Notes: generated by a model not told the origin, from the sequence alone. A stretch of DNA of 64,000 nt from Mizuhopecten yessoensis (GCF_002113885.1 NW_018407426.1:1486908-1550907), one strand, 5' to 3'; positions 328 through 18,136 are shown, counted from the first letter of the stretch. Numbers and translations: made by a program.

Positions 328-3300
328 CTAAAATTACATACATTCAAGATGATCAGTATTGATCTCGTAACTTATGATATAAAGTAATAACAACAGAATG
401 GTCTAATATTTCTTTGCTTATATATTCAAGATACTAAGAAAATAATTTAACTTCCTTTTCTGTAGCTTTTTAATCTCAATTTTCACACAGAATAAATATT
501 TTAGAACATATTTCATACAAAGAACGATTTGCTGTCAAACCTTTTTGACAAGAAACTCAACATCTTAAATAAACACATTCTACTTTGGTTGTTTAAATAA
601 TGTCATAAACACTTTTCAGGTGAGCTATATTTTTTTATAATTCAATTTACTCTAGTGCTAACAGGAGATTAGAATTGTGGAGTTATCAAAATGTGACTAA
701 GAATTGGTGTTTACATTTAATTAATTAGGATGGATGTTATTTGTATTCACAAATTACAGGTAAGTCAGTTCAGCGGGTCAGTTTGGTGATTTACTGTTTG
801 TTTATAGCTCAGAGACAAGGGTCCAGTAGCTGAGGAGAAAGTGATAATGTCAAAGGTTAAGAGCTTTACTAGTGTGGTATCTTTAGACCGTAGTCCAGTC
901 CTCATATTTCAGAAAGAGTTAGATATGAATAGGTATGTGGTCATTCTGAGGGATTGAGATATAAATAGGTGTGTAGTCATTCTGAGGGATTGAGATATAG
1001 ATAGGTGTGTGGTCATGCTGACGGACTGAGATACAAATACAGGTGTGGTCATTTTCAGGGACTGGTGTATTAATAGGTATATAAAGGTAAATAGGGAAGG
1101 CATGTATATCTAATGAGCTGGCCAGTTACTGGTATTAATAGATTTTCTAGTCCATACATCATGGTCTAATTTTAGACACTAATTTTGTACTAGGTGGTTT
1201 TCATAGTTTGTATTTAGAAGAAGCTCTATATTTATCTAGTCACTCTATCTTTTGTTTATCTTGTCTTTGGTGATATTTAGTATATTATACAATTAACTAA
1301 TTTAAGTCAGTCTTTGGGTATTTTAGTTTATGATGGTATTGGCTAAGTTTAGTCTGTCTTTGGGTATTTTAGTTTACGATGTTATTAGCTAAGTTTAGTC
1401 TGTCTTTGGGTATATATTAGATTACGATGTTATTGGCTAAGTTAAGTATGGCTTTGGGTTTATTTAGTATATGATGTCATTATCTAGAAATAGTAGTACT
1501 TATAAAAGGGATGTTAGGAGTTAAAGAGGGGAGTAAGTTGAGAATTAAGATTTAGTAGACAATGAAGAGTCACTTCCGAACAGAGAGTTTTGAGAAAATT
1601 CTGTAGAGAAGAATTAATGATGATTCGGAGAGTATTCTGTAGACTTGTGAGGAGTCTAGTAGAGTGATTTGTAGAGTGAAGATTTTAGTAGTTTGTTGAA
1701 TTTAGCAGTGTATTGAGTAGTTTAGACTTCACTTATTCAGTTATACTGCTTTTGAATGACATTTTCAGACTTCCAAAGTTTGGCTTAACTATTTTATTTA
1801 AAGGAATTTCAGTCGACTTAATTTGATCTCAAATTTGATATTACTAAGAGCTTATTACAAAGTGTGTCAATTTTGCTTTGGTTATACACTTCACTCCTGA
1901 AGACACTTTTATCTAACAATTTACTGGAACTAGTAACAAGTACATTGATTTAATTTCTTTTAATAAAACTTAAGTTCACTTTATGAAATCCTGTATGTTG
2001 TGTTTTTATAAATTTCATTTGTCAGACAAACTGAACAACTGGACTATCATTAAACATAGAGAAACAAACAAATCATTAACCCTTTCACCCCTAGGTACCT
2101 TTAGTAGACTCTACCGTGCATTGATCTGGATGAGTCCATTATGGTCTACAGTGGTGAAAGGGTTAATCGTAACAGAATGACAGTAACCCACTCAAGATTA
2201 AACTTGCACTTCAAAAGAATTCAATTTTGAATACCCTCACAACATAATGGTTTTTTTTAAACATCAACAAGAACATCATCCTACAGTTACCTCTGGAAAC
2301 CTTGGCCTCTATGTTGACTTTACAGGTCAGGCAGCGCTTTGGTTTCATACTACAATCCTGACAAGTGACCACATGTTCACAGGGCAGGAACTTGATGCAC
2401 GCCATTTGCTCTGAACACACTACACATTCAATGTCCCCGTCACTGGCCTGCTGCATCTCGGATTTAGTGCCAGTCGCACTGCAAAAACAAAAAGTATGAT
2501 AAGAAAATAATATTGTAATTTGTGTTTGAGTTATTTTATTCTTTTAGGATTACCTACCTCCTACCTCCCACATATGATAAATTTTAAGGAAAAGCCCTAA
2601 AACTAATATTAAATCAACTTCATGCCAAAATTGTTGAATAACATATGTGTAACTAATTAATGAACTAAGTTCATATGCATAAGTTCTTTTTACATATATT
2701 CTGGAACTCTTTGGAAAAGAAGGTGCTTACCATACCATATAGTATGAAAACATATAACCATGATCTAGAATTTTTATTAAACAAGTACCTGTAATGGTTT
2801 ATCCAAAGATACTCAGATAGTTCAATAAGACTTGTTTTTTCATTAATGAAATCATTTTATTTTTTCAAAATATGTATACTGTAGAATCATATTTTCGTGG
2901 GGTGAAAATTTTGTGGTTTTCATATACTAGCCTATTTCAAGGACATTAAATTTCGCTGATTTCTGATTTTCCCCTATCTATATTACACCAAATATAAGTC
3001 TCTGCGGGGATTTAATTTCGTGGATTTTTGTTATCCACAAAATAAACGAAATTAAATGTCCCATGAATATTTATGATTTTAAAGTATTTAAAGATTTTTT
3101 GGAAACATAATTTTGTTCCTAATCCAAACTACTATCCATGATACTGTATATGACCTAATAAAAGTCATACACACATTGATTTGAACAAAATCAGATAGAT
3201 TGCTAATTATTCCAAAAATTTCCAAAAATAGCCATAACAGACAATTTTTTCAAAGGAAGTCCATAAGTTATGGTGATAGGGTCAGGAATGAGGCTCTTAT

Positions 3301-6300
3301 TTGGTTAAATACACAGTTTCAAACAGTAGAAAAATTGTACTTTGATGTGGCGAACTGTTTGATGAGCTCCTCTGTACGTGCGTCACTGATGACATCCATT
3401 GGAGTCTTGCCCTGGTGGTTTTTCTGGGTGAGTTTTGCCCCTTGTTGAGCGAGATAACAAGCAATTGCAGGTCCCATTTGTTCATCATCCTCTGTCATGC
3501 CGAGTTGGTGTCGGATCTAAAAAGATACAAACGATTGTCATTACATTAACTAAAGGACAATGTTTTATTGTAGGTTTACACCTTACATACAAGAGAACAA
3601 GCCCAGAACTCCTTGCCGCCTGCTAGCAGTAAGCCCATTCTCAAATCTCCAAGGGTTACACTCACTTACGTTCTTTGCACCCCTGGAATATATCCTGGCA
3701 AAATTGAAGGCCCATGGTTAGCTATTTGACTGGTATCGGGTGAAAAAAAATCTGACCAATCACTAGGCTGATACCTAGCCTTTGAAAATTAAAGAGGAGC
3801 AACATCGGACTTCTTAGACAGTCAATTTTACTGTTACAGTGCTACAAAGGATCAAACAAGTCTATTTGTATCATCCACAAGATGGCGTGTACAAAGTCTT
3901 TGATATTGTCATGAAAATATTTCTCGGAAATTTGAGGATGCAGTAATCCCAAACCGTATCAATCTTATCATCTACCACGGCAAGCAGATACCGCCTCACT
4001 AAATGAGAGTACATATAATTGTTTTCTAATGATATGCCCATAACACCACTACCTGTTACTGCAATCTTGGATTCTAACAGAAACAAGCCAAAGGATATTG
4101 GGCATCAAGGATTGAACTATTTACAGGATTCAGTTGTTTAAAACAAATGTATGAATGAATGAATTGAGAACACACCTGTTTTGATAAAAAAGAAACATGA
4201 TGTTTTTAACTCTAGGCAAGGAGTCAAAAAAAAAAGGTAAAACACATACTACATTAGATGGATTGAATAAAAAATAAATTCCTATTTACTCAAATATGGA
4301 ACGCCTTTTTTTATTTCATTTTTTGAACAAAGTAAGGGAGATAACTCACAGCATCCAGCATTGGACTATTCTCCTTCTCTGTCGCAACAGTCTGCCTCAT
4401 GAGGGCGAGATGGAGACAGGTATCACCATCTTCATCCATTACATTGACGTCTGAGCCACACACCACCAGGAGCTCAATGATGGACGTATGGCCCTGCGAT
4501 ACCGCCAGTAGAAGTGGGGTTTGTTGTCTGTTGTTACGATTCTCTATATCAGCATGGCCCTGTACAACATAAAAATAAACACATCAATAATTGGACAAAA
4601 AATGTCTTATAAACTCTTTACCAACTTAATAATTGTGGAAAGTAAACATGATTTTATAACCAATACAATTTTACAGGGACTTCTCTCACCATATCACACG
4701 AGGTCCCGATAATTCATATCAGGCAAAAATTGATCTGTATAGCAAACACACAACAACCAAACTGTACCATTATTCAGTATCACTAATCTGCTTATTTTTG
4801 TTCTAAGACCTACTTGCGAAATAAGTGTATTTGTGACTTCCTTATGTCCATTGAGAGCGGCAAGATGGAGGGCAGAAAATCCATCGTCTTTCTTTATATC
4901 CACGATTTGTCGACACTTAGCAAGAATCTTCTCTGTTGCTCTGTAATGTAATTTTTCAAATTTAAAAATCTTGTTCTGATATCATGAGACTCTTACATAT
5001 TTATTTGTAGTAGATGGAGCTAGTTTATCTGATGAGATACTGATACATCAGCTTTTTGCTAAGCTATTTAATTCTCAGTTCATAAACCTCTTTGACACAA
5101 TACTATAAAGCCTTTCAATACATTTTTTTCTTTCATATCCAGTTTTTATTTTTAAAGAACATTAACATATTGTAGGATAAATAAATCCTTTTTACCAACA
5201 GGTCATCTTTTTGCATTGTGAATTACAATGACAACAAAAATTAATGAATGAGTGTAGGATGGATTTCTCTTGAACTTGCAATGCCAAGGGATGATTATTT
5301 TGTCAGGATCGTATAAATCGCTGGAGTATAAATTGTGTGGCATCTCTTTCAAGCACTTGTGGTGTGAGCAAGTCAGAGCAACTCACAGAAAGTGAGAAAA
5401 ATATGTTTACAAAGGACAAGGGTCATTAAGGGTCATTTCAGGCCCAATCAAGGATTTAGAATAAGTTGTTTTATTCGTAATCTGGAATATGTAATGCACA
5501 ATTTTGTTGTTATGACAGGGCTTCCATACATGTGCATTGGAAAAAATCTGCACCAAGAAAGATACCCCCAATTAACCAATATTATGGTTATAACAGAAAT
5601 CGGTAAATAAATTCCAGTTGAATTTTTTTACTTTTATATGAGGCCAAAAATGACCAATAATGACCCAAGTCCTTTATGTGTAGGGAAAATCATACTACTG
5701 GTATGCTTGTTTCTAGAATGTCAACATCATTATCTAACATTTGTCATCAAGTGTTCTTACAAATTGTTCCCTTTCAGGGCAGCATGGTGAAGCACATTGA
5801 ATCCTCTCTTGTTTTTCAGTGTAAAGTCTATGACATTGACGTTCACCAGCAGGTCAATGATCTCCCGATTCTCTTTACCGATGGCATCGTGTAGGGCGGT
5901 GTCTTCATACGAGTCCTGTGCATAAACAGTTTATTGTTAAAATCACTCATAAGCAAGACATGTGTAACAAAGGTTACTATTTTTTCAATGCCTCCCCTAG
6001 GAGTCGAACACGAGACCTCTGTTTTACTAGTTTTACCCTCTACGGAATGAGCTAAAGAGAAATTATCTCCAGCCAAGTCGGTAGGAAGGGGTTAGTATTT
6101 TACCAGGGTGGCATACTCCCCCTCCAAGTAAGAATGTGTCCTGAGTTTTCCAGGGGTCATAGCGATTCTTGTGAAAGTATCGCAGAGCATATTTGTCAAT
6201 ATTTCCCGGGTCCCTATGTGGGCACCATTGTAACGGAGGTAATTGTTTTTCAATGCCTCCGCCAGGAGTCGAACCCGGGACCACTGGCATATTAGTCTTA

Positions 6301-9300
6301 CACTCTCTTGAATGAGCTAAAGAGAAAGTCTCTCTAGCCGAGTCCGTAGTAAGCAGCTAGTATTTTACAAGGGTGACACATGTTTTGATAAAAATGATAC
6401 AATGTACCATAACCATTACACATGTTTAAAATTAAGATGCTTGTAAATAACTAATAAATGGGGATACAAAGATAATCATTTTCATAATAATATTTAATAA
6501 ATACACTTTTCATATATTGAACAAATATTCATTCAAACATTGAAGAAGATACGACTGTAATTAAATAGTATTTACATTTTAAACTGCTCCATCTGACAGT
6601 GAACCAGTCTGTCGTCATATGATATAGATACCTTAAATGACCTTGGTTTCTTTCTGTAGTAAGTCGTGTAATATTAACCCTTTCACCACTGTAGACCATA
6701 ATGGACCCCTCCATATCAATGCATGGTAGAGTCTACTTAAGTTACACAGGGGTGAAAGGGTTATCAGTATTACAAGACCATAGAACATCAGATAGTTCTG
6801 GTTTCCACTGTTCTGTCATGGTATACCAGATTTAAAATTATCTGTAATACCTGATTTGAAATCTTGCCATCTGAGGCAAAAATCTAGACCAAAATCTAGT
6901 TTTATGAGATTCTTATAAACAGTTTTCTAGACATTGGGTGCAAACAAACTTAACTGTAAACTCATTTTAACTCATTCACCCCTGAAATTTCAAAATGAAC
7001 TATTCAGACCTTTGAATTGGAAGAGTTCAAATGTATATTCAGGGGTGAATGAGTTAAAGATGGATGAGAAATGTTTTTCAGCATCACCTAATTTTGTACA
7101 GATAAGGGTATTAAACCCCAAATGAACAATGGAAGAACATCTACCATCTCCCAATTATTTTATCCTTTCGCTTGAATTCCCTGATCTATAACTCACAATG
7201 GCGATTGAATTCCCTGATCTATAACTCACAATGGCGATTGAATTCCCTGATCTATAACTTACAATGGAGATACATGTTATCAATCTCCATGTGGAATTTT
7301 AGTCCCCAACACCAATATGTTGAATCAATACCTGTATGTTGACGTTGCACTGATCATGTGCGAGGAGGATCTTGACACAGTCGAGGTGTTGTTTGTTGAC
7401 GGCCACGTGGAGTGTGCTGCAGCCACCATTGTTCAGGGCGTTTATATGAACCTTCTGTCTCAGTAGTAAACGCATCACTTCAGCCTGATTCCTGTTTTAC
7501 ATACCATTCAAACTTCAAAGAGGTGCAAGTTAAGTTTCGGGTACCAATAGCAAAATGAAAACATAACGTGATGATGACTTTGAACAAGAAAGTTGTAAGG
7601 CAAATACCTGGAATATTAATGGTACTGTAATATTTTGCATTTTTTTTAAACATCAGGGTTTTAAATACTAACCTAATTCAATGTTTAATTAGATTTCATT
7701 GGATTTGTAATTTTCATTGTTTTGACAACAAACTTCCAATAAATTTTTCTTTGTGAAAAGGTAATGTTCAATAAAAAAAAATGTGGTTTTCTGCCCGAGT
7801 TGTATAAAGCAGATTAACGTATAATTTTGAAGCACTTACCCAAATGCTGAATAGTGGAGAGCCGAGTCTCCATCTTCGTCCTGGAGCTCCAGATTGGCCC
7901 CAGCATGTAGCAGGATCTGTACGATCTCCGTGTGTCCCTGATGACTGGCCACCTGTAGAGCTGTCTTACCTGAACTCTTCATGTCCACCTACAAAAGCCA
8001 TGTTAACTTGAATGCTATGTATTGATATGCATACAAACCGCACATAATATTGATCAATTATGGACTTTATCTGAGGTGAACATGCATTTATATAGACCTG
8101 AAAAGGATATTATAATCGAGACAATGTCGAGGTCAATATAACTTTTCAGGTCCATATAATCACATATTTACCAAAATGAATAGTTCTTAATTATTAGATA
8201 TGAAATCATGCTGTTTTCTTATTAAGCAAAATAGAAGGTAATAAAATTGGCAAGAAAAAATGACTGTTTTAGGCAGTGAACATTGTACTGTTACAATTGA
8301 ACTGACATCATATGGAGAATATTAACCTGATGTATCTAAAAAATAGTAACTTAAGGTTAAAATAACACCAACCTCCACGTGATTGTGATTGACCAAATGA
8401 GAATATAGGAATAAGTTGTGATTGTAAATGCTAGATAATGATTAAAGATGTTTATTTCATAAGCTATCAGGATGATCATAACTAACCTTGTCAGGATGTT
8501 TACTGAATGAGCTATTGGGATGATCATAATTAACCTTGTCAGGATGTTTACTTCATAAGCTATTGGGATGATCATTACTAACCTTGTCAGGAAGTTAACT
8601 GAATAAGCTATCAGGGTCATATCAAACCCTATCAGGATATTTACTGAATAAGCTATCAGGTTCATAGCTTACCTTGTCAGGATGTTTACTGAATATGTTA
8701 TCAGGGTCATAGCTTACCTTGTCAGGATGTTTACTGAATATGTTATCAGGATCATAGCTTACCTTGTCAGGATGTTTACTGAATAAGTTATCGGGGTCAT
8801 AACTTACCTTGTCAGGATGTTTACTGAATAGAATATCAGAATGATCCTAATAAGCTATCAGGGTCATAGCTTACCTTGTCAGGATGTTTACTGATTAAGC
8901 TACCAGGGTCATAGCTTACCTTGTCAGGATGTTTACTGAATAAGTTATCGGGGTCATAACTTACCTTGTCAGGATGTTTACTGAATAGAATATCAGAATG
9001 ATCCTAATAAGCTATCAGGGTCATAGCTTACCTTGTCAGGATGTTTACTGACGATCTCCTTGACGATTTCAGTGTGACCTTGAGCAGCCTCCCTTACAAG
9101 CCTGTCTGGTCCCGAGTCCAAGGACTTTATCTCCATCAGCTGTTCCAACAGGGAGGTCAAGCTCACTGTAAAATGAAAATATGGTTTAAAATTATTTTTA
9201 TTACTTATTTTTACAAAGGAAATCAACATTTGAGAAGAGTATTATTTATGACAATTGGATGGCTCTTTACCTACAGACAATGCAAGGCCACACTTACCCA

Positions 9301-12300
9301 GCACACCAATTATTAACTGACCATTCTGCCTGTGAACTATTGCCCTCTATTTTACTTTTAGGTCTCCATTGTCAAACTTCACATCTTATCTCTGACTTCT
9401 ATAAACAAGATCAACACTGATGACATTTGACCTTAATAACAGAGACTACCACTGCCAGCAACCCCTGACCTTGACCATTGCTTAGAGTGCTAGTGACCCT
9501 GATGTTTAAAACTTAAACCACCACTTATTACCCAGACTTGATTAACCTAGGCTAACCCAAGTGACCCCAGACTTTTAGCACAAAACCAAAATATCAGTCT
9601 CTGACTTTTAAATTCAGACCGTAGTTGAGCAAAGGCAACTAAATAAGGCAACCTTTGACTATTATTACACAATACAAACAATCTGCCATGACTCTGCATA
9701 TTATGAACACGGCCCTCAACAGGTGACCCCTGACCTATACATGTGACCTCTTGCCAATATTTACCCCCTGAAGCCTCCTCACGCTCAGGTGCCGCCCCAT
9801 TGGTGTTGTTGACATTTGGCTGCGCATGCTGGGCTAGCGTACAACTCGCAGGGTTCAAAGTCCATGTTTGACCAGCAGACACAGACACTCTGAGGTCCCC
9901 ATCCGGATAGACCTTCAGTACTCGACCAGTCTTCCCTAGGGCCTACAACAGGGAGGCAACGTTTGGTTCGCAAATAATATCACAAGATTAAATGAGATAC
10001 AAGAAAATTTAGACATATGTCGAAAATTTATAACAGTGAACATTTTGTGTAAAAGAAAACTGGTGTATCAGCATTGAACCGAAAAAGCTTACTACAAATC
10101 ATATTTTAGAGACGCTTTACAAAATTTATAAATCTTGAAATTAATATTGCTGCAATACATACATTGTAAAGAAAAGGCAGTAGATCATATACTGTTTTAT
10201 CTACATGAATGATATTTAATACATGAAATTGGACATTTTCTTATCAGGAACTGGGGAAATGTAAATTAAATGATTAAGATTTTTTTGTTTTACATATATA
10301 TCACAGCTTTCCTACTTTTATCTGCAAAGCTGCATACTACAGCCATCAATACTTCAAAAGGTCAACCTGTATATTGCAGTCAACATTTTCATCTACAAAG
10401 CTGTATACTTCAGCCATCAATACTTCAAAAGGTCAAACTGTATATTGCAGTCAACATTTTCATCTACAAAGCTGTATACTTCAGCCATCAATACTTCAAA
10501 AGGTCAAACTGTATATTGCAGTCAACATTTTCATCTACAAAGCTGTATACTTCAGCCATCAATACTTCAAAAGGTCAAACTGTATATTGCAGTCAACATT
10601 TTCATCTACAAAGCTGTATACTTCAGCCATCAATACTTCAAAAGGTCAAACTGTATATTGCAGTCAACATTTTCATCTACAAAGCTGTATACTTCAGCCA
10701 TCAATACTTCAAAAGGTCAAACTGTATATTGCAGTCAACATTTTCATCTACAAAGCTGTATACTTCAGCCATCAATACTTCAAAAGGTCAAACTGTATAT
10801 TGCAGTCAACATTTTCATCTACAAAGCTGTATACTTCAGCCATCAATACTTCAAAAGGTCAAACTGTATATTGCAGTCAACATTTTCATCTACAAAGCTG
10901 TATACTTCAGCCATCAATACTTCAAAAGGTCAAACTGTATATTGCAGTCAACATTTTCATCTACAAAGCTGTATACTTCAGCCATCAATACTTCAAAAGG
11001 TCAAACTGTATATTGCAGTCAACATTTTCATCTACAAAGCTGTATACTTCAGCCATCAATACTTCAAAAGGTCAAACTGTATATTGCAGTCAACATTTTC
11101 ATCTACAAAGCTGTATACTTCAGCCATCAATACTTCAAAAGGTCAAACTGTATATTGCAGTCAACATTTTCATCTACAAAGCTGTATACTTCAGCCATCA
11201 ATACTTCAAAAGGTCAAACTGTATATTGCAGTCAACATTTTCATCTACAAAGCTGTATACTTCAGCCATCAATACTTCAAAAGGTCAAACTGTATATTGC
11301 AGTCAACATTTTCATCTACAAAGCTGTATACTTCAGCCATCAATACTTCAAAAGGTCAAACTGTATATTGCAGTCAACATTTTCATCTACAAAGCTGTAT
11401 ACTTCAGCCATCAATACTTCAAAAGGTCAAACTGTATATTGCAGTCAACATTTTCATCTACAAAGCTGTATACTTCAGCCATCAATACTTCAAAAGGTCA
11501 AACTGTATATTGCAGTCAACATTTTCATCTACAAAGCTGTATACTTCAGCCATCAATACTTCAAAAGGTCAAACTGTATATTGCAGTCAACATTTTCATC
11601 TACAAAGCTGTATACTTCAGCCATCAATACTTCAAAAGGTCAAACTGTATATTGCAGTCAACACTTTTATCTACAATGCTTCATACTACAGCCATCAATA
11701 CTTCAAAAGGTCAAACTGTATATTGCAGTCAACACTTTTATCTACAAAACTGTATACTACAGCCATCAATACTTAAAAAGGTCAAACTGTATATTGCAGT
11801 CAACATTTACATCGACAAAGCTGTATACTTCAGCCATCAATACTTCAAAAGGTCAAACTGTATATTGCAGTCAACATTTTTATCAACAAAGCTGTATACT
11901 GCAGTTGTCAATACTTTAATCTTTTCATCACTGTAGACCATAATGGACTCATCCAGATCAATGCATGGTAGAGTCTACTAAAGTTACATTAGGTGAAAGG
12001 GTTAAACTGTCAAGCTTTACATTGCAGCTGTCAATATTTTTATGTAAACCTGTATACATTGTACTACACCTGTCAATACTGTAATCTGTTAAACTGTATA
12101 CGGCAATACGTGTATCTGTTATTAAAGAGCTTCAGTTGTCATGATTCAATACAGACATTTAGCTATTTTACAAAGACGAAATCAAAATAGGGGAAATACC
12201 TAGACACCTAGAAACTGCTGCTACTGATAAGTCCTTTCACCACTGTAGACCAAAATGGACTCATCCAGATCAATGCATGGTATAGTCTATTAAAGTAACA

Positions 12301-15300
12301 TAGGGGTGAAAGAGTTAAGTACACAGCATGGAATAATGGTAAAAGAATCTAACTGTTGATACAGACATGGATGAAGTCATATTACAAAATAAAACAATGA
12401 CTGACGTAACGTCACAAGGAAATGTTAAACAGTGAGTATACTGACCGGCCGCATGTTTTCTGACCATTCTCCATGACCCTTCTGTAGTTCCTTCACTATA
12501 TGTATGTCCTGCGATATCTTTACAATGTCATTTAATGCAAACAAGTGCACCTGAAAAAATACAGCTTCAAAATGAGTTTGCATTTTAAGAAATGTCACTG
12601 AAGGATAATTAGTATTTGGTTTTCAGTTTTAAATCAAAAGGATTAAAAGAAAATGAATGTGATCAGATATTTTTTAATGCCTAAAGATTTCATAATTCAT
12701 CTGCATGAAAACTTCAATTTTTCTCTTTTGTTCATCCAACTGGATGCATGTTTATCTTATTTTTGTAATAGATCCATTTCTTTAATAAGGATTAAGTCTC
12801 ATGCAGAAAACTTTCAGCAATAATACAGTTTTAATAGTGGTTAAATATAACTGGAATTTTATGCTGCATGAATATGAACCTTTTTATTAAAATATTACCT
12901 CATGAATGCAAAGTTGTATAGAGTAGGTGAACTATCTTTCACCATGATTTCGTTTTACCTTGGTCAGGGCTCCAGCATGGAACGTCCATCGATTACTACA
13001 TCCTTCATACTGTACCCTTACATCCCCGCGGTCTGTGATGCGATGGACTGACCCAACCTTGCCAATGTACTGAAAACAAATCAAATGATGTTACTTCTTC
13101 AAACAAAATAACATTACTCGATTAACTTTAATCAATCAAAACCATAAATCAATATAGTATTAGTATTGTACATAAGTAACCTTTGAGGAATGTACATACA
13201 GACAAAAACTAAACACAAACCCAAGAACTACTTTTTAAAAGCTTTGGAATAGGATCCAATAAGGGGCAGAATTTGTAAACACGCTACCTGTCCCCCTGAC
13301 TGCCTGCAGTATTGAGTGAAATGTCTCTATGATTTTTGACAACTGACTTTGCTGATGCGGCACATGGTGGCTCAGTGAGTTGTTGTCAACTTGACAAAGG
13401 TAACAGACATTTTCGACAGCTCGCATAATAAGGTTTCAATTCCTGTTTGTGTTCAAAACAAACTTATCCTTTACTTTTGAAAGTATTGTTCGATATCCCC
13501 CCCCCCCCCCCCCAATGGTTGGGGGTTAAAACTCGTTTCATAAATCTCATATGAAATTGAAACTCATGTAAGATCCTATACATCTGTTATTATATCGGAA
13601 AAGCTACCAAAATTACAATCTGCAAATGAACATGTCCAACAGACACACAGAATACCCCCATATCATCAGTGGAGTTAAAATACATCCTAACATAATGTAA
13701 ACTTAGCTTCTTTTTGCCTGAACTCATACCTCTGCCATTCGTGGATTCCAGCCACCATGACCTTCCTGCATGGCCTTCAGGATATCTGCTTCTAGGTCAA
13801 CCTTGACCTTGTCCCCGACCTTGAACTGACACTGCACACCTCCTGAGGTCACTATATCTGGGAACTCTCCTGCAGTGTGGAGTTGTGATAATTAAGTTTT
13901 GCAAAAAAATAAACACTCAGCAAAGTTCAAGAAACAAGATAGTAATTTGCAACAAATATGACACATTATAATCAGGACAATAGACACTTTTCAAGATGTT
14001 GGTATCAAAGGAAAAGACCATGGAAACATTATTTTTTTCTCAAAATATTGGCAAAAATGTTAAGAAATCTGATGAAATGTACCTTGAAATAATTCTTGAG
14101 ATATGAGGTTTATTAAAATTGTCCATAATTATAAGCTTTTGTTTTAACCATTAAATGCAACCTTAAAACCCATTGAATAAATTTCAAATGAGGGTTGAGG
14201 AGGACATCGTATTCTGTGATTTCTGCCAGTCTATTAGAGACTGTTATGACACCAATCTACACATACCCAGTACAGGAAGGTGCTCCTTGTAGTAGGATGG
14301 TCCGTTGGCAGCACTGATATATTTCAGGTCTACCTTGCCCTTGTGTCCTACACGGTAAACATTGGTAGATCCGGACGTCCATGTTACGTGGGCTACACTT
14401 CGCCCTGATTCCGAGTCCCATCCTCGTATATCTGTCACCTTGCCTATCTTTCCTTCCCCACCTGTATGGGTGTGATTTATATCAATACATACCATCATGT
14501 TCAACAACTTATGAATGTATCATGTTAAGAAACTTCAATAAGTTAACAGAAGACTGGGATATAATCAGCAACTTCACTTCAAGGTTTACATAGTTTGGCC
14601 CACTAGGTTGGGTCATTATCAGAATACTTTAACAGTTTTTAATAACATTTATAGCTACAACTCTTTAATTTTTCTGGTTACCATCATTCTGACCTGAGAA
14701 ACAAGACCTGTTTTTGGACAAACATATCTTACTTGATATATATATCATGAAACAAATGTTCAGAGTTACAGCATAATTGATAACATCCACAATTTACAGT
14801 TCACCTACAAGAAAAAATTCTCTGTCCATAAGTTTTTGAATTATTTATTATAACGGCAAAAGATATCTAGGACACTAAATATATATGCTTTGTACTGCTC
14901 CCTGCTATACTCTGACAAGGGAAGCTTACCATCCTGGTTAGCCCAATCCCAGTCTGGTCCTCGTAAAACCCTGGCCCCGGGGAAAATTCCCCAGGATTGG
15001 ATTTTATTACTGTTCACACTATCCTTCCTTTTTGGCATTTTCACTCTAAAAATAAATAAAGCATTCATTCTTTTTTTATAACATTCTCAAAACTGGAACC
15101 TATATTATATAGCTAACAGATTGAGTAAATAGGAAATGTTTGTGATCATATAAAAATGCTTCATGTATGTCCATGATGTGTTCTTATATATATGAATAAA
15201 TACATAGAGTAATTTTCTATTTCAGCAAAACAGTTTCATTAAGTTTTAGATACATCTAATGTTCAAAGTCTTAGCAACACCATTTAGGTTTGGAGAGTGA

Positions 15301-16661
15301 ATTTGTTATATTTCACTAAATATTTGTAATAGACAACTTATATATAGGCTCCTACAGAATCGGAAAGCAGTCTTCCATGTTCTCAGCATAAGGGACAATA
15401 TATAGGAGTCAAAATGTGACACCTCTGATTTCCATCTTTTCATTCCTCAAATCTATACTATTGGTGTTTTTTTTAAATATAAACTTTCGTTATTTCAACT
15501 TATATTAATCACTTAAACACTCTTGTTGGTCTAGATGTTAGGGTGGGGTGGGGTGGGGGGTGCGGAGAGAGGGGGGTTGGTGGTCTGATTTTGGGAGGAA
15601 ACCAGAGTACCCGGAGTAAACCCACGTGGTTGGGCAGGTGACCCCATACCTTTAATTTTTCACGTCCGAACCCCGGCCACCTTGGTGAAAGTGCCCTATC
15701 CACTGCTTCACCTGACTACCCACTATTGTTACTATTACTGTCGTTCTGTGTATTCTCCCTTTCCACCAATTGTCATATATGACCTTAATCAAAACAGTGT
15801 AATATCACAAACATATAAACATGTACATACCCTTTTGAAGGAGATGTCTCAAATCTGAGAAAGGAGTGGCCTAGGTCGTGTTTGTCCGACATGTAACACT
15901 CGGTACACAGGTCAAAGTCGTGACACTTGGTGCACTTCCACCGCATTCCCTGGATGCCCTGCTTCTTACAGCCATCACAAATGATGTTCGGATGTTTTAC
16001 ACCTAAAACAACACATTTTATATACATGGTTACATGTCAACAGCAATACAGTTAACAAATTATTGTAGAATCTTTTTAATTTAAACACTTATATTTAACT
16101 TTCCAGAAAATACATATATTCAAACTGGTTACAACCCTAGCACCAGGTATGAAACCCCTTGCTATAATCAAGCCTGGGTTCTCAAGCACTTAACTTTCTA
16201 CACTTCACAAATAATTGAAAAAATTTCAGAGATTATGCTTGATAATTGCAAAAGATACAAAATAACATGTATATTCATCCACAAGAAAATCAATAGTGAT
16301 AAGCTTAGTGAAACAAGGAAATAGATGAGAATTTTATTTTGTTGATGTATTTTACATCTGCGAGTAAGAACAAGATAGCTAAATCATGACTGAATCGAAA
16401 TGTGATCTGTGATAATAATAAAAGTTATATTCACAAACCTGTGGGTGCATTGTCCAGAACTCGAAGGTCATAGGCGCCCTGATAACCCACTCGATAATTG
16501 GTGCGAGCTCCAGAATCCCACTGAACTACAACAGTTTTATCTGGCGAAGTGGAACTGCTCGGCTTGCCTATTTCCACCACTGTGCCAACGTGACCCTCTC
16601 CGTCATCTTGGTTACCCCATTTCCAGTCTGGGCCACGGACCGCCCGTAACCCCACCTCCAT
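92..16661 (-). CDS. MIB2: E3 ubiquitin ligase mind bomb 2-like, 17 coding exons, 924 aa (whole coding span)
   Basis: Exons join with consistent phases (sum 2775 nt). Starts [19 protein letters not shown] (Mib/Herc2), then ZZ finger, second Mib/Herc2, two REP repeats (GHGGWN, GHGEWS), ankyrin repeats and two C-terminal RINGs. Two RINGs fits MIB2; MIB1 has three. Confidence 0.93.
920..1082. repeat. 36-bp tandem repeat, about 4.5 copies
   Basis: ATAGGT recurs at 929, 965, 1001, 1073. Confidence 0.8.
1297..1480. repeat. about 46-bp tandem repeat x4
   Basis: CTTTGGG at 1312, 1358, 1404, 1452. Confidence 0.8.
2076..2166. mobile_element. TTAA-flanked piggyBac-like MITE, subfamily A
   Basis: TTAA CCCTTTCACC...GGTGAAAGGG TTAA; 83 bp between TTAAs. 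Confidence 0.85.
2291..2478 (-). CDS. MIB2: MIB2 exon 16 (RING1)
   Basis: CVVC...[11 protein letters not shown]...CLTC. Confidence 0.92.
2877..3086. mobile_element. degenerate TIR element (TACTGTAGAATCAT...ATGATTTTAAAGTA)
   Basis: Imperfect terminal inverted repeats with TA ends; internal TTTCGTGG/CCACAAAA motifs. Confidence 0.55.
3341..3516 (-). CDS. MIB2: MIB2 exon 15
   Basis: IRHQLG...[11 protein letters not shown]...NHQGKTPMD. Confidence 0.88.
4350..4559 (-). CDS. MIB2: MIB2 exon 14 (ankyrin)
   Basis: [24 protein letters not shown]...[12 protein letters not shown]. Confidence 0.92.
4814..4940 (-). CDS. MIB2: MIB2 exon 13 (ankyrin)
   Basis: [32 protein letters not shown]. Confidence 0.92.
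5761..5915 (-). CDS. MIB2: MIB2 exon 12 (ankyrin)
   Basis: [15 protein letters not shown]...[16 protein letters not shown]. Confidence 0.92.
5963..6378 (-). mobile_element. miniature non-autonomous LTR retrotransposon (TRIM) with tRNA-like sequence in both LTRs
   Basis: LTRs 5963-6113 and 6229-6378 (TG..CA); TSD CATG on both sides; minus-strand PBS TGGTGCCCACATAGGGAC from 6227; PPT GGAGGGGGAG 6125-6116. Confidence 0.85.
6674..6764. mobile_element. TTAA MITE subfamily A (inverted relative to 2076)
   Basis: Same TIRs and interior, 83 bp. Confidence 0.85.
6967..7057. mobile_element. TTAA MITE subfamily B
   Basis: TTAA CTCATTCACCCCTGAA...TTCAGGGGTGAATGAG TTAA, 83 bp. Confidence 0.85.
7172..7268. 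repeat. 33-bp tandem repeat x3
   Basis: TTGAATTCCCTGATCTATAACTCACAATGGCGA at 7172, 7205, 7238. Confidence 0.9.
7332..7491 (-). CDS. MIB2: MIB2 exon 11 (ankyrin)
   Basis: [10 protein letters not shown]...[13 protein letters not shown]...CNVNIQ. Confidence 0.92.
7840..7988 (-). CDS. MIB2: MIB2 exon 10 (ankyrin)
   Basis: [19 protein letters not shown]...[13 protein letters not shown]. Confidence 0.92.
8440..9051 (-). repeat. 45/48/67-bp tandem array built from the MIB2 exon 9 end plus its splice donor
   Basis: ACCTTGTCAGGA at 8485, 8533, 8581, 8671, 8716, 8761, 8806, 8873, 8918, 8963 and 9030 (real donor). Confidence 0.92.
9032..9165 (-). CDS. MIB2: MIB2 exon 9 (first ankyrin)
   Basis: SLTSLLEQ...[23 protein letters not shown]|GTAAGC. 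Confidence 0.9.
9765..9942 (-). CDS. MIB2: MIB2 exon 8
   Basis: [34 protein letters not shown]... Confidence 0.88.
10310..11915. repeat. 71-bp satellite, about 22 copies
   Basis: Near-identical units in the core, diverged edges; explains the three long repetitive ORFs. Confidence 0.97.
11916..12005. mobile_element. TTAA MITE subfamily A
   Basis: Matches 6674 copy; 82 bp. Confidence 0.8.
12228..12318. mobile_element. TTAA MITE subfamily A
   Basis: Matches 6674 copy; left end degraded. Confidence 0.8.
12446..12550 (-). CDS. MIB2: MIB2 exon 7 (REP2)
   Basis: [35 protein letters not shown]. Confidence 0.9.
12959..13069 (-). CDS. MIB2: MIB2 exon 6
   Basis: [37 protein letters not shown]. Confidence 0.9.
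13730..13869 (-). CDS. MIB2: MIB2 exon 5 (REP1)
   Basis: [32 protein letters not shown]; not in ORF track, read manually. Confidence 0.9.
14267..14461 (-). CDS. MIB2: MIB2 exon 4 (second Mib/Herc2)
   Basis: GGEGKIGKV...[12 protein letters not shown]...EHLPVL. Confidence 0.92.
14930..15045 (-). CDS. MIB2: MIB2 exon 3
   Basis: VKMPKR...[20 protein letters not shown]; donor G|GTAAGC. Confidence 0.92.
15480..15722 (-). mobile_element. tRNA-derived SINE with V-domain-like core
   Basis: Minus strand GTGGGTTTACTCCGGGTACTCTGGTTTCCTCCCA and B-box GGTTCGGAC; homologous to the 43.1-kb copy. Confidence 0.7.
15831..16002 (-). CDS. MIB2: MIB2 exon 2 (ZZ zinc finger)
   Basis: [12 protein letters not shown]...[14 protein letters not shown]; AG/GT bounded. 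Confidence 0.93.
16439..16661 (-). CDS. MIB2: MIB2 coding exon 1 (Mib/Herc2 domain)
   Basis: ATG 16661 preceded by acceptor ttttctttccaag|gct; ends AG|GTTTGT, phase 1. Confidence 0.93.
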
Positions 16662-18136
16662 AGCCTTGGAAAGAAAATTGAAAATCAGTCAATGTATCAA
16701 TGCATTAGTGTTGCAAAATACTTCATATTAATTTATAATTCCGAAAAAAACCATATTAATTTTGGAGAAATGTTTTAGTTATCTTTCTTAATGCTAAATG
16801 TTTTGAGCAAAGGAGACAAATTTAGAATCTAATTACAATAAAATATGTGGAGAAGTAAGTAGGTTAGATATGCTAGTAATAAACATTTGAAGGTGTGGAT
16901 TTACTGCAGAAAATAATTTGATTAAGCATGGTTGAGTAGGTGATAAAATGGAAACAGAGATAAGTATAGTTGGTTCTGTGAAAAAAAATCAATGAAATTT
17001 GTCTGCATGGCATTTGTTTTATATGTAAATGTATGTTTATCAAGCTGTCAACTCAGCTGGTATTTATATGTTGATCTTATACAAATTTAAATATTATCAA
17101 CTTATATTCTCTTTTCTTTGTATTGCAATAATTTCTAAAGGTTTTTTTCAGCTAGTCCCAGAAACACAGCTAACTTTGATAAAAGAACAGATTAAGTTCA
17201 ACTTGGAAAATAATTTGGACCTTGATATATATACCTGCCACGAACTCCAACTTAGATAAGATATATATATATGCCTACCAATACAAACTCCTTCTCTGCT
17301 TCCATTTATCAAGTCTGTCTCCCCCAACCCCCGACATTGGACATTTATCAGTGCTAGGCCTACTGTGTGCATTTGTATTACTTTCACATTTATTTGGATT
17401 ATACCAATTAAACTATAAACCAAATAACAATTATATGTCACATATCATATACAATGCCTCCAGTAAAGATCTATACCTTTATAATGTTTCACTCTTATGA
17501 GTTGTGCTGCATGAAGAACAAGAATGATCAAAAGTTTTGTATTCAGAGGAGTTTAAAATTTGCTAACTTAACCTAATTCACTTTGTAGTGTTAGGCTCTT
17601 TAAACTATTGTTGTTGATCTTGGCACAATATCTGGTTAACAATTACTTTTCCACATCAAATTGATAGATGTACACATGTATAGAACATACATAGTACAGT
17701 TGGTACAAAATCTTTTTGGAGTAGCCACTGCTTCAGAAAAAAATAATAGTAGCAGTAGGTTTCCTTGACATAAGGCGGACAAATTACAGGCGTTTTCCTT
17801 CCCCTCCCCCCTTCAAGCCCCAAAATTAAACCATTTTGCCCCATTTTTGTTCAGATTGCCCCAATTTACAGTTCATTTTGCCTCATGTTTGACAACCATA
17901 TCGCCCAAAAATTTCTTTTTTGACCAAAAATCTAAATACATATATGTCGCCTCAAGAGCTAGCAAACAATATACTAAAACTGGTGGTAACTCATGTATTT
18001 TCAGAACTGGTATTATTTCCTTTTTATTACAAATACCCATGTTTGTGTATTAAATTACAGTCTCATTAAGTTTATATCTAAAGGATAAAGAATGAGACAT
18101 TCAGTCTGCTCTTTTGAAAGTGGTGCACTTATTACC

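What the first reader, a model, noticed from the sequence alone, without database searches (positions are those of the whole stretch)
5963..6378. Miniature LTR retroelement whose LTRs each carry a tRNA-like Pol III promoter
Seen: two diverged ~150-bp direct repeats, each TG..CA, around a 115-bp non-coding interior, flanked by a CATG duplication. On the minus strand a PBS (TGGTGCCCACATAGGGAC, loosely tRNA-Lys-like) follows the 5' LTR by 1 nt, and a polypurine tract precedes the 3' LTR. Each LTR contains a tRNA-like block (about 6326-6254: A-box TAGCTCATT..AGAG, B-box GGTTCGACTCC, ending GGAGGCA). Established: plant Cassandra TRIMs carry 5S-derived Pol III promoters in their LTRs; I recall tRNA-in-LTR elements being described as Ajax but cannot verify membership. 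Inference: a SINE/LTR hybrid transcribed by Pol III and mobilised in trans by a Gypsy-like partner (4-bp TSD). It lies 47 bp upstream of the MIB2 exon 12 acceptor, in sense orientation.
Basis: partly seen in the sequence, partly recalled or inferred. Interest (0 to 1): 0.85.

Follow-up and report, generated by a model that had tools for sequence, protein, structure and literature searches.

The report
Old Helenus tRNA-LTR mini-retroelement copy
This is a real but old and decayed copy of Helenus-1_MiYe, a 417-bp non-coding LTR retroelement with a tRNA-like unit in each LTR that was already published in 2024 from this same scallop assembly, so it is correctly read but not new.

Summary
On the minus strand, window 5963-6378 reads: 150-bp LTR, 1 nt, 18-nt PBS, a 115-nt non-coding interior, PPT, 151-bp LTR. 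It is flanked by a CATG duplication.

It belongs to a dispersed family. At least 40 full-length copies exist, with about 1,085 LTR starts. Ends are sharp (TGTC...TTACA). Perfect 4-bp target duplications occur in 13 of 28 copies, against 1.6% in controls. Within-copy LTR identity reaches 99.3%, against about 88.6% between copies, which is the signature of true LTR retrotransposition.

The family PBS is an 18/18 complement of the host tRNA-Lys(UUU) 3' end plus CCA. Each LTR holds a 73-nt tRNA-like cloverleaf with A and B boxes and anticodon AGU. It scores 27.5 bits on the Rfam tRNA model, just under the threshold of 29.

The family is already published: Helenus-1_MiYe (Kojima 2024, PMC10886601), LTR 151, interior 115, total 417, TSD 4, from assembly ASM211388v2.

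The window copy is the oldest examined (LTR-LTR identity 79.7%, PBS hit by two CpG decays). It sits in sense orientation in an intron of a mind-bomb-type E3 ligase gene.

Pol III transcription and a Gypsy partner remain inferences. RNA reads showed only read-through.

The parts
6379..6382 (.). Target-site duplication CATG, upstream side of the element in its own (minus-strand) sense
   Evidence: The same 4 nt recur at 5959-5962. 13 of 28 family copies have perfect copy-specific 4-bp TSDs.
6229..6378 (-). 5' LTR, 150 bp, TGTC...GTTACA
   Evidence: Direct repeat D1. The family alignment shows a sharp 5' boundary at TGTC and the LTR end CTGTTACA before the PBS.
6254..6326 (-). 73-nt tRNA-like unit in the 5' LTR. 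It has an A box (TAGCTCATTC..AGAG), a B box (GGTTCGACTCC) and a degenerate acceptor.
   Evidence: The homologous segment in copies L007 and L009 aligns to the whole Rfam tRNA model (positions 1-71) at 27.5 and 27.3 bits against a threshold of 29; the L007 alignment shows anticodon loop CUAGUAA. In the window copy only a T-arm fragment scores, and ARAGORN finds nothing.
6210..6227 (-). Primer-binding site TGGTGCCCACATAGGGAC, 1 nt after the LTR
   Evidence: The family form TGGCGCCCACGTAGGGAC is an 18/18 complement of the 3' end plus CCA of the host tRNA-Lys(UUU) gene at L046:1442-1514. The window copy differs at two CpG sites (CG>TG and CG>CA).
6114..6228 (-). Non-coding interior, 115 nt, including spacer, PBS and PPT
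   Evidence: The length equals the published Helenus-1_MiYe interior of 115 nt.
6116..6125 (-). Polypurine tract GGAGGGGGAG, followed by TA and then the 3' LTR
   Evidence: Conserved across copies as GGGGGAG-TA-TGTCACCC. The PPT/LTR junction occurs 383 times in the genome at up to 2 mismatches.
5963..6113 (-). 3' LTR, 151 bp. Its start is mutated to TGCC; it ends GTTACA.
   Evidence: Identity to the 5' LTR is 79.7%, K2P 0.238.
5989..6061 (-). tRNA-like unit in the 3' LTR
   Evidence: Same register as 6254-6326.
5959..5962 (.). Target-site duplication CATG, downstream side
5761..5915 (-). Ankyrin-repeat exon of the host mind-bomb-type E3 ligase gene. Its acceptor AG is at 5917-5916, and 47 intron bases separate it from the element.
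   Evidence: The open stretch 5760-5930 hits Pfam Ank_2 and Ank. Neighbouring minus-strand exons hit MIB_HERC2 (twice), ZZ, Ank and two RING fingers.

Best explanation
Window 5963-6378 is an ancient, inactive insertion of Helenus-1_MiYe. This is a 417-bp non-autonomous LTR retrotransposon (a TRIM of the proposed 'TRIMp3' type) of the Yesso scallop, and each of its LTRs contains a tRNA-Thr(AGU)-like unit.

Shown here:
- The family moves by the LTR-retroelement route. The two LTRs are near-identical at insertion.
- Termini are TG..CA, and integration makes 4-bp target duplications.
- An 18-nt PBS exactly complements the host tRNA-Lys(UUU) 3' end.
- A PPT precedes the 3' LTR.
- LTR starts outnumber internal junctions, which leaves room for solo LTRs (none was checked individually), and tandem LTR-interior arrays exist.

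Inferred, not shown:
- The element encodes nothing, so gag, RT and integrase must come in trans from a Ty3/Gypsy element that uses the same tRNA-Lys primer.
- The A and B boxes in the LTR recruit Pol III. Transcription would start near LTR position 54, so U3 is about 53 nt and R runs to the LTR end. I put this at about 50-60%.

This particular copy is dead. Its LTRs are 20% diverged and its PBS is mutated. It is a neutral passenger in an intron of a mind-bomb-type gene.
For: Genome identity: 987,588,634 bases in 82,659 contigs. This fits the assembly ASM211388v2 named in the paper (my recollection of that assembly's size) and is corroborated by the near-match to the published consensus below.

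Family evidence:
- At least 40 full-length matches at 80-86% identity, from 1,538 candidates.
- Sharp boundaries with unrelated flanks.
- Perfect 4-bp TSDs in 13 of 28 copies and at least 3 of 4 matching bases in 19 of 28. Shuffled pairings give 1.6% perfect; P about 1e-16.
- Within-copy LTR identity of 99.3% (L004, L005) and 98% (L002, L003), against 88.6% between copies. No site distinguishes 5' from 3' LTRs.

Primer and tRNA-like unit:
- The PBS is an 18/18 complement of the host tRNA-Lys(UUU) 3' end plus CCA.
- The Rfam tRNA model aligns end to end to LTRs at 27.5 and 27.3 bits, with anticodon AGU in the L007 alignment.

Copy counts: 306 LTR-end/PBS junctions, 383 PPT/LTR-start junctions and 1,085 LTR starts.

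Literature:
- Kojima 2024 Table S1 lists Helenus-1_MiYe with LTR 151, interior 115, total 417 and TSD 4, from ASM211388v2.
- By eye, the published consensus matches the 5' LTR of natural copy L002 at 149 of 151 positions.
- Animal Helenus have 4-bp TSDs, and bivalve families use tRNA-Lys primers and carry tRNA-Thr-like units.

Possible partners: Ty3/Gypsy-type elements with the identical PBS exist in this genome. Their domain order is gag(PNMA-like)-RT-RNaseH-integrase.
Against: - The window copy is only about 80-86% identical to other copies, and its own tRNA-like units no longer score as tRNA.
- I could not align it formally to the published consensus, because that would mean typing the sequence. 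Membership rests on natural near-consensus copies.
- Pol III use has no direct support. About 90% of family-matching RNA reads run on into unrelated flanks, both orientations are about equal, and no pile-up of starts was seen.
- Near-consensus copies have no T4 run on the sense strand: 0.36 T4+ runs per copy against 5.4 A4+ runs. But only about 1.35 T4+ runs are expected by chance, and the copies share ancestry, so this is not significant.
- No Gypsy element shares more than 24-31 nt (LTR end plus PBS) with the TRIM.
Confidence: 0.93

Rival explanations
1. The tRNA-like unit is a passive passenger. Under this reading it is a tRNA-SINE (SINE2) or tRNA fragment that once landed in an ancestral TRIM LTR and was copied to both LTRs. 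The element would be transcribed by Pol II or by read-through, and Pol III would play no part in its propagation.
For: - RNA reads matching the family are almost all chimeric with flanking sequence, lie in both orientations, and show no common start.
- The sense-strand T4 depletion is not statistically significant.
- Kojima himself states that Pol III function is unvalidated and proposes a SINE2-insertion origin.
Against: - A and B boxes are reported as conserved across Helenus families in fungi, animals and plants.
- The tRNA-like unit keeps a nearly complete cloverleaf in near-consensus copies.
- The libraries laid are standard RNA-seq and may under-sample short non-polyadenylated Pol III RNAs, so one search is weak negative evidence.
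Confidence: 0.35
2. The element is a local tandem duplication of a tRNA pseudogene, or a dimeric tRNA-derived SINE moved by a LINE.
For: Two tRNA-like units lie 265 bp apart. Bivalve genomes are rich in tRNA-derived SINEs (literature titles listed).
Against: - The whole 416-bp unit recurs at least 40 times with unrelated flanks.
- The tRNA-like unit starts 53 nt inside the repeat, not at its 5' end.
- There is no A-rich or simple-repeat tail.
- TSDs are a fixed 4 bp.
- A PBS and a PPT sit at the expected places.
- The two repeats of one copy are up to 99.3% alike, while copies differ by about 11%, and no 5'- or 3'-specific sites exist. A unit copied as a whole by a LINE would not give this pattern.
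Confidence: 0.01
3. The element is a fragment of a short satellite or tandem-repeat-bearing element with a 265-bp period, not a retroelement.
For: Some loci carry two or three PBS copies at 264-285-bp spacing, and overlapping full-length matches occur at C2179:882711-883609.
Against: - Most copies are single LTR-interior-LTR units with TSDs.
- Such arrays are a known secondary product of LTR-LTR recombination in Cassandra, biv-TRIM and LTR-11_DR (title).
Confidence: 0.01

Closest known systems
Helenus-1_MiYe (Helenus group of TRIMs, 'TRIMp3'; Kojima 2024, Biology 13:119, PMC10886601)
   Same: - Same assembly.
- LTR 150-151, interior 115, total 416-417, 4-bp TSD.
- Same LTR termini, and same PBS and PPT strings.
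- tRNA-Thr(AGU)-like unit in the LTR.
- Natural copy L002 matches the published LTR consensus at 149 of 151 positions by eye.
   Different: - The window copy is an old, roughly 15-20% diverged member of an older subfamily (interior variant TTTCACAAGAA...CTTGGAG).
- Small refinement found here: the primer is the host's own tRNA-Lys(UUU), 18/18 with no gap. The paper aligned the PBS, with a gap, to Aplysia tRNA-Lys-CTT because no scallop tRNA set was available.
Ajax (Kojima 2024)
   Same: A TRIM whose LTRs carry a small-RNA-derived Pol III promoter.
   Different: Ajax carries a partial 5S rRNA promoter, is known only from two nemerteans, has a tRNA-Leu PBS and makes 5-bp TSDs. No 5S match was seen here.
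Cassandra (plant TRIM with 5S rRNA in the LTRs; Kalendar et al. 2008, as cited in PMC10886601)
   Same: Same design: a non-coding TRIM with a Pol III gene-like unit in each LTR, and tandem arrays occur.
   Different: Cassandra is a plant element with a 5S-derived unit, is 565-860 bp long, and has experimentally shown Pol III transcripts.
biv-TRIM (Satovic et al. 2019, PMC6934838)
   Same: A bivalve TRIM with solo repeats and tandem arrays.
   Different: Terminal repeats are 202-218 bp, the interior is 77-80 bp, the PPT is GGGGAGA, no canonical PBS was identified, and no tRNA-like LTR unit is reported.
tRNA-derived SINEs (SINE2) of bivalves
   Same: A tRNA-like unit with A and B boxes. A SINE2 is a plausible source of the LTR insert.
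   Different: SINEs have the tRNA head at the 5' end, a LINE-type tail and variable TSDs, and lack LTRs, a PBS and a PPT.

Membership tests
Helenus (TRIM with tRNA-derived LTR sequence) | Two LTRs around a short non-coding interior (TRIM architecture) | tested here: met
   LTRs of 150 and 151 nt around 115 nt. The family alignment agrees. No gene-like reading frame: the open stretches that overlap the element are read from repeat DNA, and the 115-nt interior is filled by PBS, spacer and PPT.
Helenus (TRIM with tRNA-derived LTR sequence) | tRNA-derived sequence with box A (TRGCY..YGG) and box B (GGTTC) inside each LTR | tested here: met
   TAGCTCATTCGG and GGTTCGACTCC are present in near-consensus copies. 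The Rfam tRNA model aligns end to end at 27.5 bits in copy L007. The window copy keeps the box strings but scores below detection.
Helenus (TRIM with tRNA-derived LTR sequence) | PBS complementary to a tRNA 3' end just after the 5' LTR, and a PPT before the 3' LTR | tested here: met
   The family PBS is an 18/18 complement of host tRNA-Lys(UUU) plus CCA. The PPT is GGGGGAG. The window copy matches the PBS at 16 of 18 positions.
Helenus (TRIM with tRNA-derived LTR sequence) | 4-bp TSD in animal members | tested here: met
   CATG in the window. 13 of 28 copies have perfect 4-bp TSDs, P about 1e-16.
Helenus-1_MiYe (the specific family) | Sequence match to the published consensus (LTR 151, interior 115) | tested here: met
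   Dimensions are identical. The published strings match natural copies L002-L005 by eye, with the L002 5' LTR at 149 of 151. The window is 86% identical to L002 over 416 nt. No formal alignment to the consensus was run, because it would have had to be typed.
Helenus / TRIMp3 | Functional Pol III promoter in the LTR | tested here: inconclusive
   RNA-seq reads show read-through only and no discrete start. T4 avoidance is not significant. The published paper also leaves this unvalidated.
Ajax | 5S rRNA promoter fragment (box A, IE, box C) in the LTR, with a 5-bp TSD | tested here: not met
   No 5S_rRNA match in Rfam scans of the window or of six copies. The TSD is 4 bp.
Cassandra | 5S rRNA-derived sequence in the LTRs; plant host | tested here: not met
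   No 5S match. The host is an animal: it carries a mind-bomb-type gene, and the family is published from a scallop assembly.
tRNA-derived SINE (SINE2) | tRNA head at the 5' terminus, LINE-related or A-rich tail, LINE-type variable TSDs, no LTR/PBS/PPT | tested here: not met
   The tRNA-like unit starts at LTR position 54. Ends are TG..CA with a 4-bp TSD, a PBS and a PPT, and LTRs are homogenised within copies.

The most novel reading that the evidence does not exclude
Helenus-1_MiYe may be primed specifically by tRNA-Lys(UUU) and mobilised by one particular Ty3/Gypsy lineage of this genome, the L055/L073 type.

That lineage shares with the TRIM:
- an identical 25-nt LTR-end/1-nt-spacer/PBS junction;
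- a similar LTR start (TGTGGCACCCTG against TGTCACCCTG), in both cases preceded by TA after the PPT;
- 4-bp TSDs.

If true, this would be the first concrete autonomous partner named for an animal TRIMp3 element.
Probability: 0.2. Interest if true: 0.35.

Novelty: already known. Interest (0 to 1): 0.12.

Why it matters
It matters little beyond annotation. The element should be masked as Helenus-1_MiYe, and its tRNA-like units should not be counted as tRNA genes or SINEs.

The class itself is interesting: LTR retroelements that appear to have swapped a Pol II promoter for a Pol III one, in parallel with SINEs. But it was described in 2024, including for this species.

Two small additions come from this work. 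The primer matches the host tRNA-Lys(UUU) gene exactly, 18 of 18. Gypsy elements with the same PBS exist in this genome and are candidate partners.

Pol III transcription of Helenus is still unproven anywhere.

Tried and rejected
- ARAGORN found no tRNA in the window copy or in 29 other copies. The units are too degenerate for it, and only the Rfam covariance model sees them.
- My guess at the primer tRNA's 5' end as GCCCACG had no exact match. The real gene starts GCCCGCG with a G-U pair.
- Partner search. The PBS followed by a non-TRIM base gave 22 sites, falling into about 8 non-TRIM contexts. Two were confirmed as Ty3/Gypsy-type. Similarity to the TRIM is limited to 24-31 nt at the LTR end plus PBS, and terminal alignments are weak. 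The partner is unresolved.
- RNA evidence for Pol III. The four raw-read runs gave only read-through-like, two-orientation coverage, mostly on LTRs. This neither supports nor refutes Pol III use.
- T4-run avoidance on the sense strand is real in count but not significant.
Only the junction counts speak to them.
- A formal alignment to the published consensus was left out, since it has no reference and would have had to be typed.
- The dimeric-SINE, local-duplication and satellite readings were rejected.
Full report
**1. Observation**

Read on the minus strand, window 6378-5963 has the following layout:

- a 150-bp repeat at 6378-6229, TGTC...GTTACA;
- one spacer base at 6228;
- TGGTGCCCACATAGGGAC at 6227-6210;
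- an interior of 115 nt in all (6228-6114);
- a purine run GGAGGGGGAG at 6125-6116, followed by TA;
- a second repeat of 151 bp at 6113-5963, TGCC...GTTACA.

CATG flanks both ends, at 6379-6382 and 5959-5962. The two repeats are 81% identical without gaps over 133 nt and 79.5-79.7% identical overall.

**2. Repeat family, not a local accident**

A search of the window's own genome returned 43 matches from 1,538 candidates. Forty of them cover essentially the whole 416-bp query at 80-86% identity, on many contigs. The genome has 987,588,634 bases in 82,659 contigs.

I extracted 30 loci and aligned them. Similarity begins exactly at TGTC and ends exactly at GTTACA, and the flanks are unrelated.

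The four bases before and after the element agree as follows:

- identical in 13 of 28 independent copies;
- at least 3 of 4 matching in 19 of 28;
- identical in only 1.6% of mismatched flank pairs (binomial P about 1e-16).

The TSDs differ from copy to copy (CATG, CCAT, TTTA, TAGA, TTAA, TGGT and others).

**3. LTR retrotransposition versus a unit copied as a whole**

If a dimer were copied as a block, for example by a LINE, the 5' repeats of all copies would share differences from the 3' repeats. They do not: no alignment column distinguishes the two sets.

Instead, the two repeats of one copy resemble each other more than they resemble other copies:

- 99.3% in L004 and L005;
- 98% in L002 and L003;
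- about 88.6% between copies.

That is the signature of LTRs regenerated at each reverse-transcription cycle. The window copy has the lowest within-copy identity of the 29 examined (79.7%, K2P 0.238), so it is an old insertion.

**4. PBS and PPT**

Across copies, the LTR end CTGTTACA is followed by T and then TGGCGCCCACGTAGGGAC. The 3' LTR is preceded by GGGGGAG-TA.

I located a host tRNA-Lys(UUU) gene at L046:1442-1514 (74 bits on the Rfam tRNA model). Its 3' end is ...GTCCCTACGTGGGCG. With the CCA that is added after transcription, it is an 18/18 complement of the family PBS.

The window copy differs at two positions, both CpG decays (CG>TG and CG>CA).

**5. The tRNA-like unit**

ARAGORN finds nothing in the window copy or in the other copies. 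The Rfam tRNA covariance model does align the LTRs of L007 and L009 end to end (model positions 1-71), at 27.5 and 27.3 bits against a gathering score of 29.

The L007 alignment shows:

- an intact D arm and T arm;
- five of seven acceptor pairs;
- an anticodon loop CUAGUAA, giving anticodon AGU (Thr).

The unit occupies LTR positions 54-126. The box A (TAGCTCATTCGG) and box B (GGTTCGACTCC) strings are present. In the window copy only a T-arm fragment scores.

**6. Abundance and derived forms**

Counts of 21-nt junction strings at up to 2 mismatches, with zero hits for reversed controls:

| String | Count |
|---|---|
| LTR-end/PBS junction | 306 |
| PPT/LTR-start junction | 383 |
| LTR start | 1,085 |

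LTRs therefore outnumber twice the interiors, as expected if solo LTRs exist.

Several contigs carry two or three PBS copies at 264-285-bp spacing, and C2179 has overlapping full-length matches. These are tandem LTR-interior arrays.

**7. What is known**

A literature search found Kojima 2024 (PMC10886601). Its main points are:

- TRIMs with tRNA-derived LTR sequence are named Helenus.
- Ajax is the 5S-bearing group from two nemerteans, with 5-bp TSDs.
- Animal Helenus make 4-bp TSDs.
- Helenus occurs in five orders of pteriomorph bivalves, including Pectinida.
- Bivalve families use tRNA-Lys among other primers.
- Seven bivalve families carry predicted tRNA-Thr.

Table 1 of the paper names Mizuhopecten yessoensis. 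Table S1 lists Helenus-1_MiYe from ASM211388v2 with LTR 151, interior 115, total 417 and TSD 4.

The published LTR and interior strings are those of my near-consensus natural copies. By eye, the L002 5' LTR differs at 2 of 151 positions. The window copy is 86% identical to L002 over its full length. Its interior carries variants (TTTCACAAGAA, CTTGGAG) shared with L006, L013, L014 and others, apparently an older subfamily.

I did not align the window to the published consensus formally, because that sequence has no reference here and would have had to be typed.

biv-TRIM (PMC6934838) is a different element: repeats of 202-218 bp, an interior of 77-80 bp and no canonical PBS.

**8. Mechanism: shown and inferred**

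Shown: the LTR-type replication signature, the PBS-primer match, the PPT, the 4-bp TSD and the non-coding interior.

The first inference is that proteins come in trans from a Ty3/Gypsy element. The evidence is as follows.

- The PBS followed by a non-TRIM base occurs at 22 sites, in about eight different LTR contexts.
- Two contexts are full LTR elements with the domain order gag(PNMA-like)-RT-RNaseH-integrase.
- The L055/L073 type shares an identical 25-nt LTR-end/T-spacer/PBS junction with Helenus-1.
- Once its LTR boundary is set by its TGTT duplication, it also has a similar LTR start: TGTGGCACCCTG against TGTCACCCTG.
- Similarity goes no further, so the partner is only a candidate.

The second inference is Pol III transcription from the LTR boxes.

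- I laid four raw-read RNA runs of the same species on a near-consensus copy at 90% likeness.
- Reads cover the LTRs far more than the interior.
- Both orientations are about equal.
- About 90% of reads run on into unrelated sequence.
- No place shows a pile-up of starts.

That pattern is passive co-transcription of many copies. Standard libraries may miss short non-polyadenylated RNAs, so it is weak negative evidence.

On the sense strand, T4+ runs are almost absent (0.36 per copy, none in 20 of 28 copies), while A4+ runs average 5.4 at nearly equal A and T content. This fits a unit that Pol III must read through. But only about 1.35 T4+ runs are expected by chance and the copies are not independent, so I do not count it as support. 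Kojima also states that Pol III function in Helenus is unvalidated.

**9. Gene context**

Minus-strand open stretches around the element hit the following Pfam families:

- MIB_HERC2 at 16434-16688 and 14247-14519;
- ZZ at 15788-16036;
- ankyrin repeats at 7839-7988, 7302-7496, 5760-5930 and 4697-4981;
- two RING fingers at 2214-2543 and 95-343.

This is the mind-bomb architecture, and two RINGs are consistent with MIB2. The element lies in an intron in sense orientation. Its last base is 47 intron bases from the exon that starts at 5915. The remaining 47 nt still hold a plausible branch site and pyrimidine stretch. The insertion is old, and I see no sign that it matters to the gene. The exon number was not checked.

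**10. Verdict**

The structural interpretation is right, the name is wrong (Helenus, not Ajax), and the family is already published from this very assembly. Novelty: already known. Interest is low.

Two small additions come from this work: the gapless 18/18 match to the host's tRNA-Lys(UUU), and a list of Gypsy elements with the same PBS as candidate partners.

Other first-stage notes on this genome describe similar tRNA-bearing mini-LTR elements. They agree with this reading but are unchecked.

Noticed in passing
window 10316-11916; also 6673-6763, 2077-2167 (-), 11916-12004, 12233-12317: A 71-bp unit is repeated 22.6 times at 98% identity. It is directly followed by a roughly 90-nt dispersed repeat that recurs three more times in introns of the same gene. 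This looks like the satellite-bearing MITE/Helentron-type elements common in bivalves.
   Followed up: partly
window 6651-6793: A long hairpin gives a sub-threshold Rfam MIR1222 match (28 bits against a threshold of 90). It overlaps the dispersed 90-nt repeat, so it is probably a MITE hairpin rather than a miRNA gene.
   Followed up: no
window 8447-9051, 7172-7271, 921-1078, 1262-1486: Several intronic minisatellites with periods of 45, 33, 36 and 46 bp.
   Followed up: no
L046:1442-1514 (-) and L046:631-702 (-): Host tRNA-Lys(UUU) and tRNA-Gln(UUG) genes lie about 740 nt apart. The Lys gene is the exact primer match for the Helenus-1 PBS.
   Followed up: yes
G000 contigs C4865:187348-187935, C5434:1661281-1661866, C3070, C4116, C4304, C4687, C5367, C76428, C2179:882711-883609: Two or three PBS copies lie on one strand at 264-285-bp spacing, and overlapping full-length matches occur. 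These are tandem LTR-interior arrays of Helenus, as reported for Cassandra and LTR-11_DR.
   Followed up: partly
L055 with L073 (C1829:~123,450-131,600) and L062 with L076 (C5024): Two Ty3/Gypsy-type LTR elements use the identical 18-nt tRNA-Lys(UUU) PBS. Their LTRs are 541 bp (98.2% alike) and 450 bp (98.7% alike), and the second has the TSD CAAC. The pol region of the first is split into several reading frames.
   Followed up: partly
L064:1502-1718: A second, related Helenus family (LTR 77-85% identical to Helenus-1) has the same PBS. It is probably the published Helenus-3_MiYe. Part of the locus is N.
   Followed up: no
L007 (C2064) and L011 (C5455): The same Helenus insertion with the same flanks and the same TSD (TGGT) appears on two contigs. 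This is either a segmental duplication or uncollapsed haplotypes in the assembly.
   Followed up: no
If real, it would be an Ajax/Cassandra-type element in a mollusc, where none is published.
   Followed up: no
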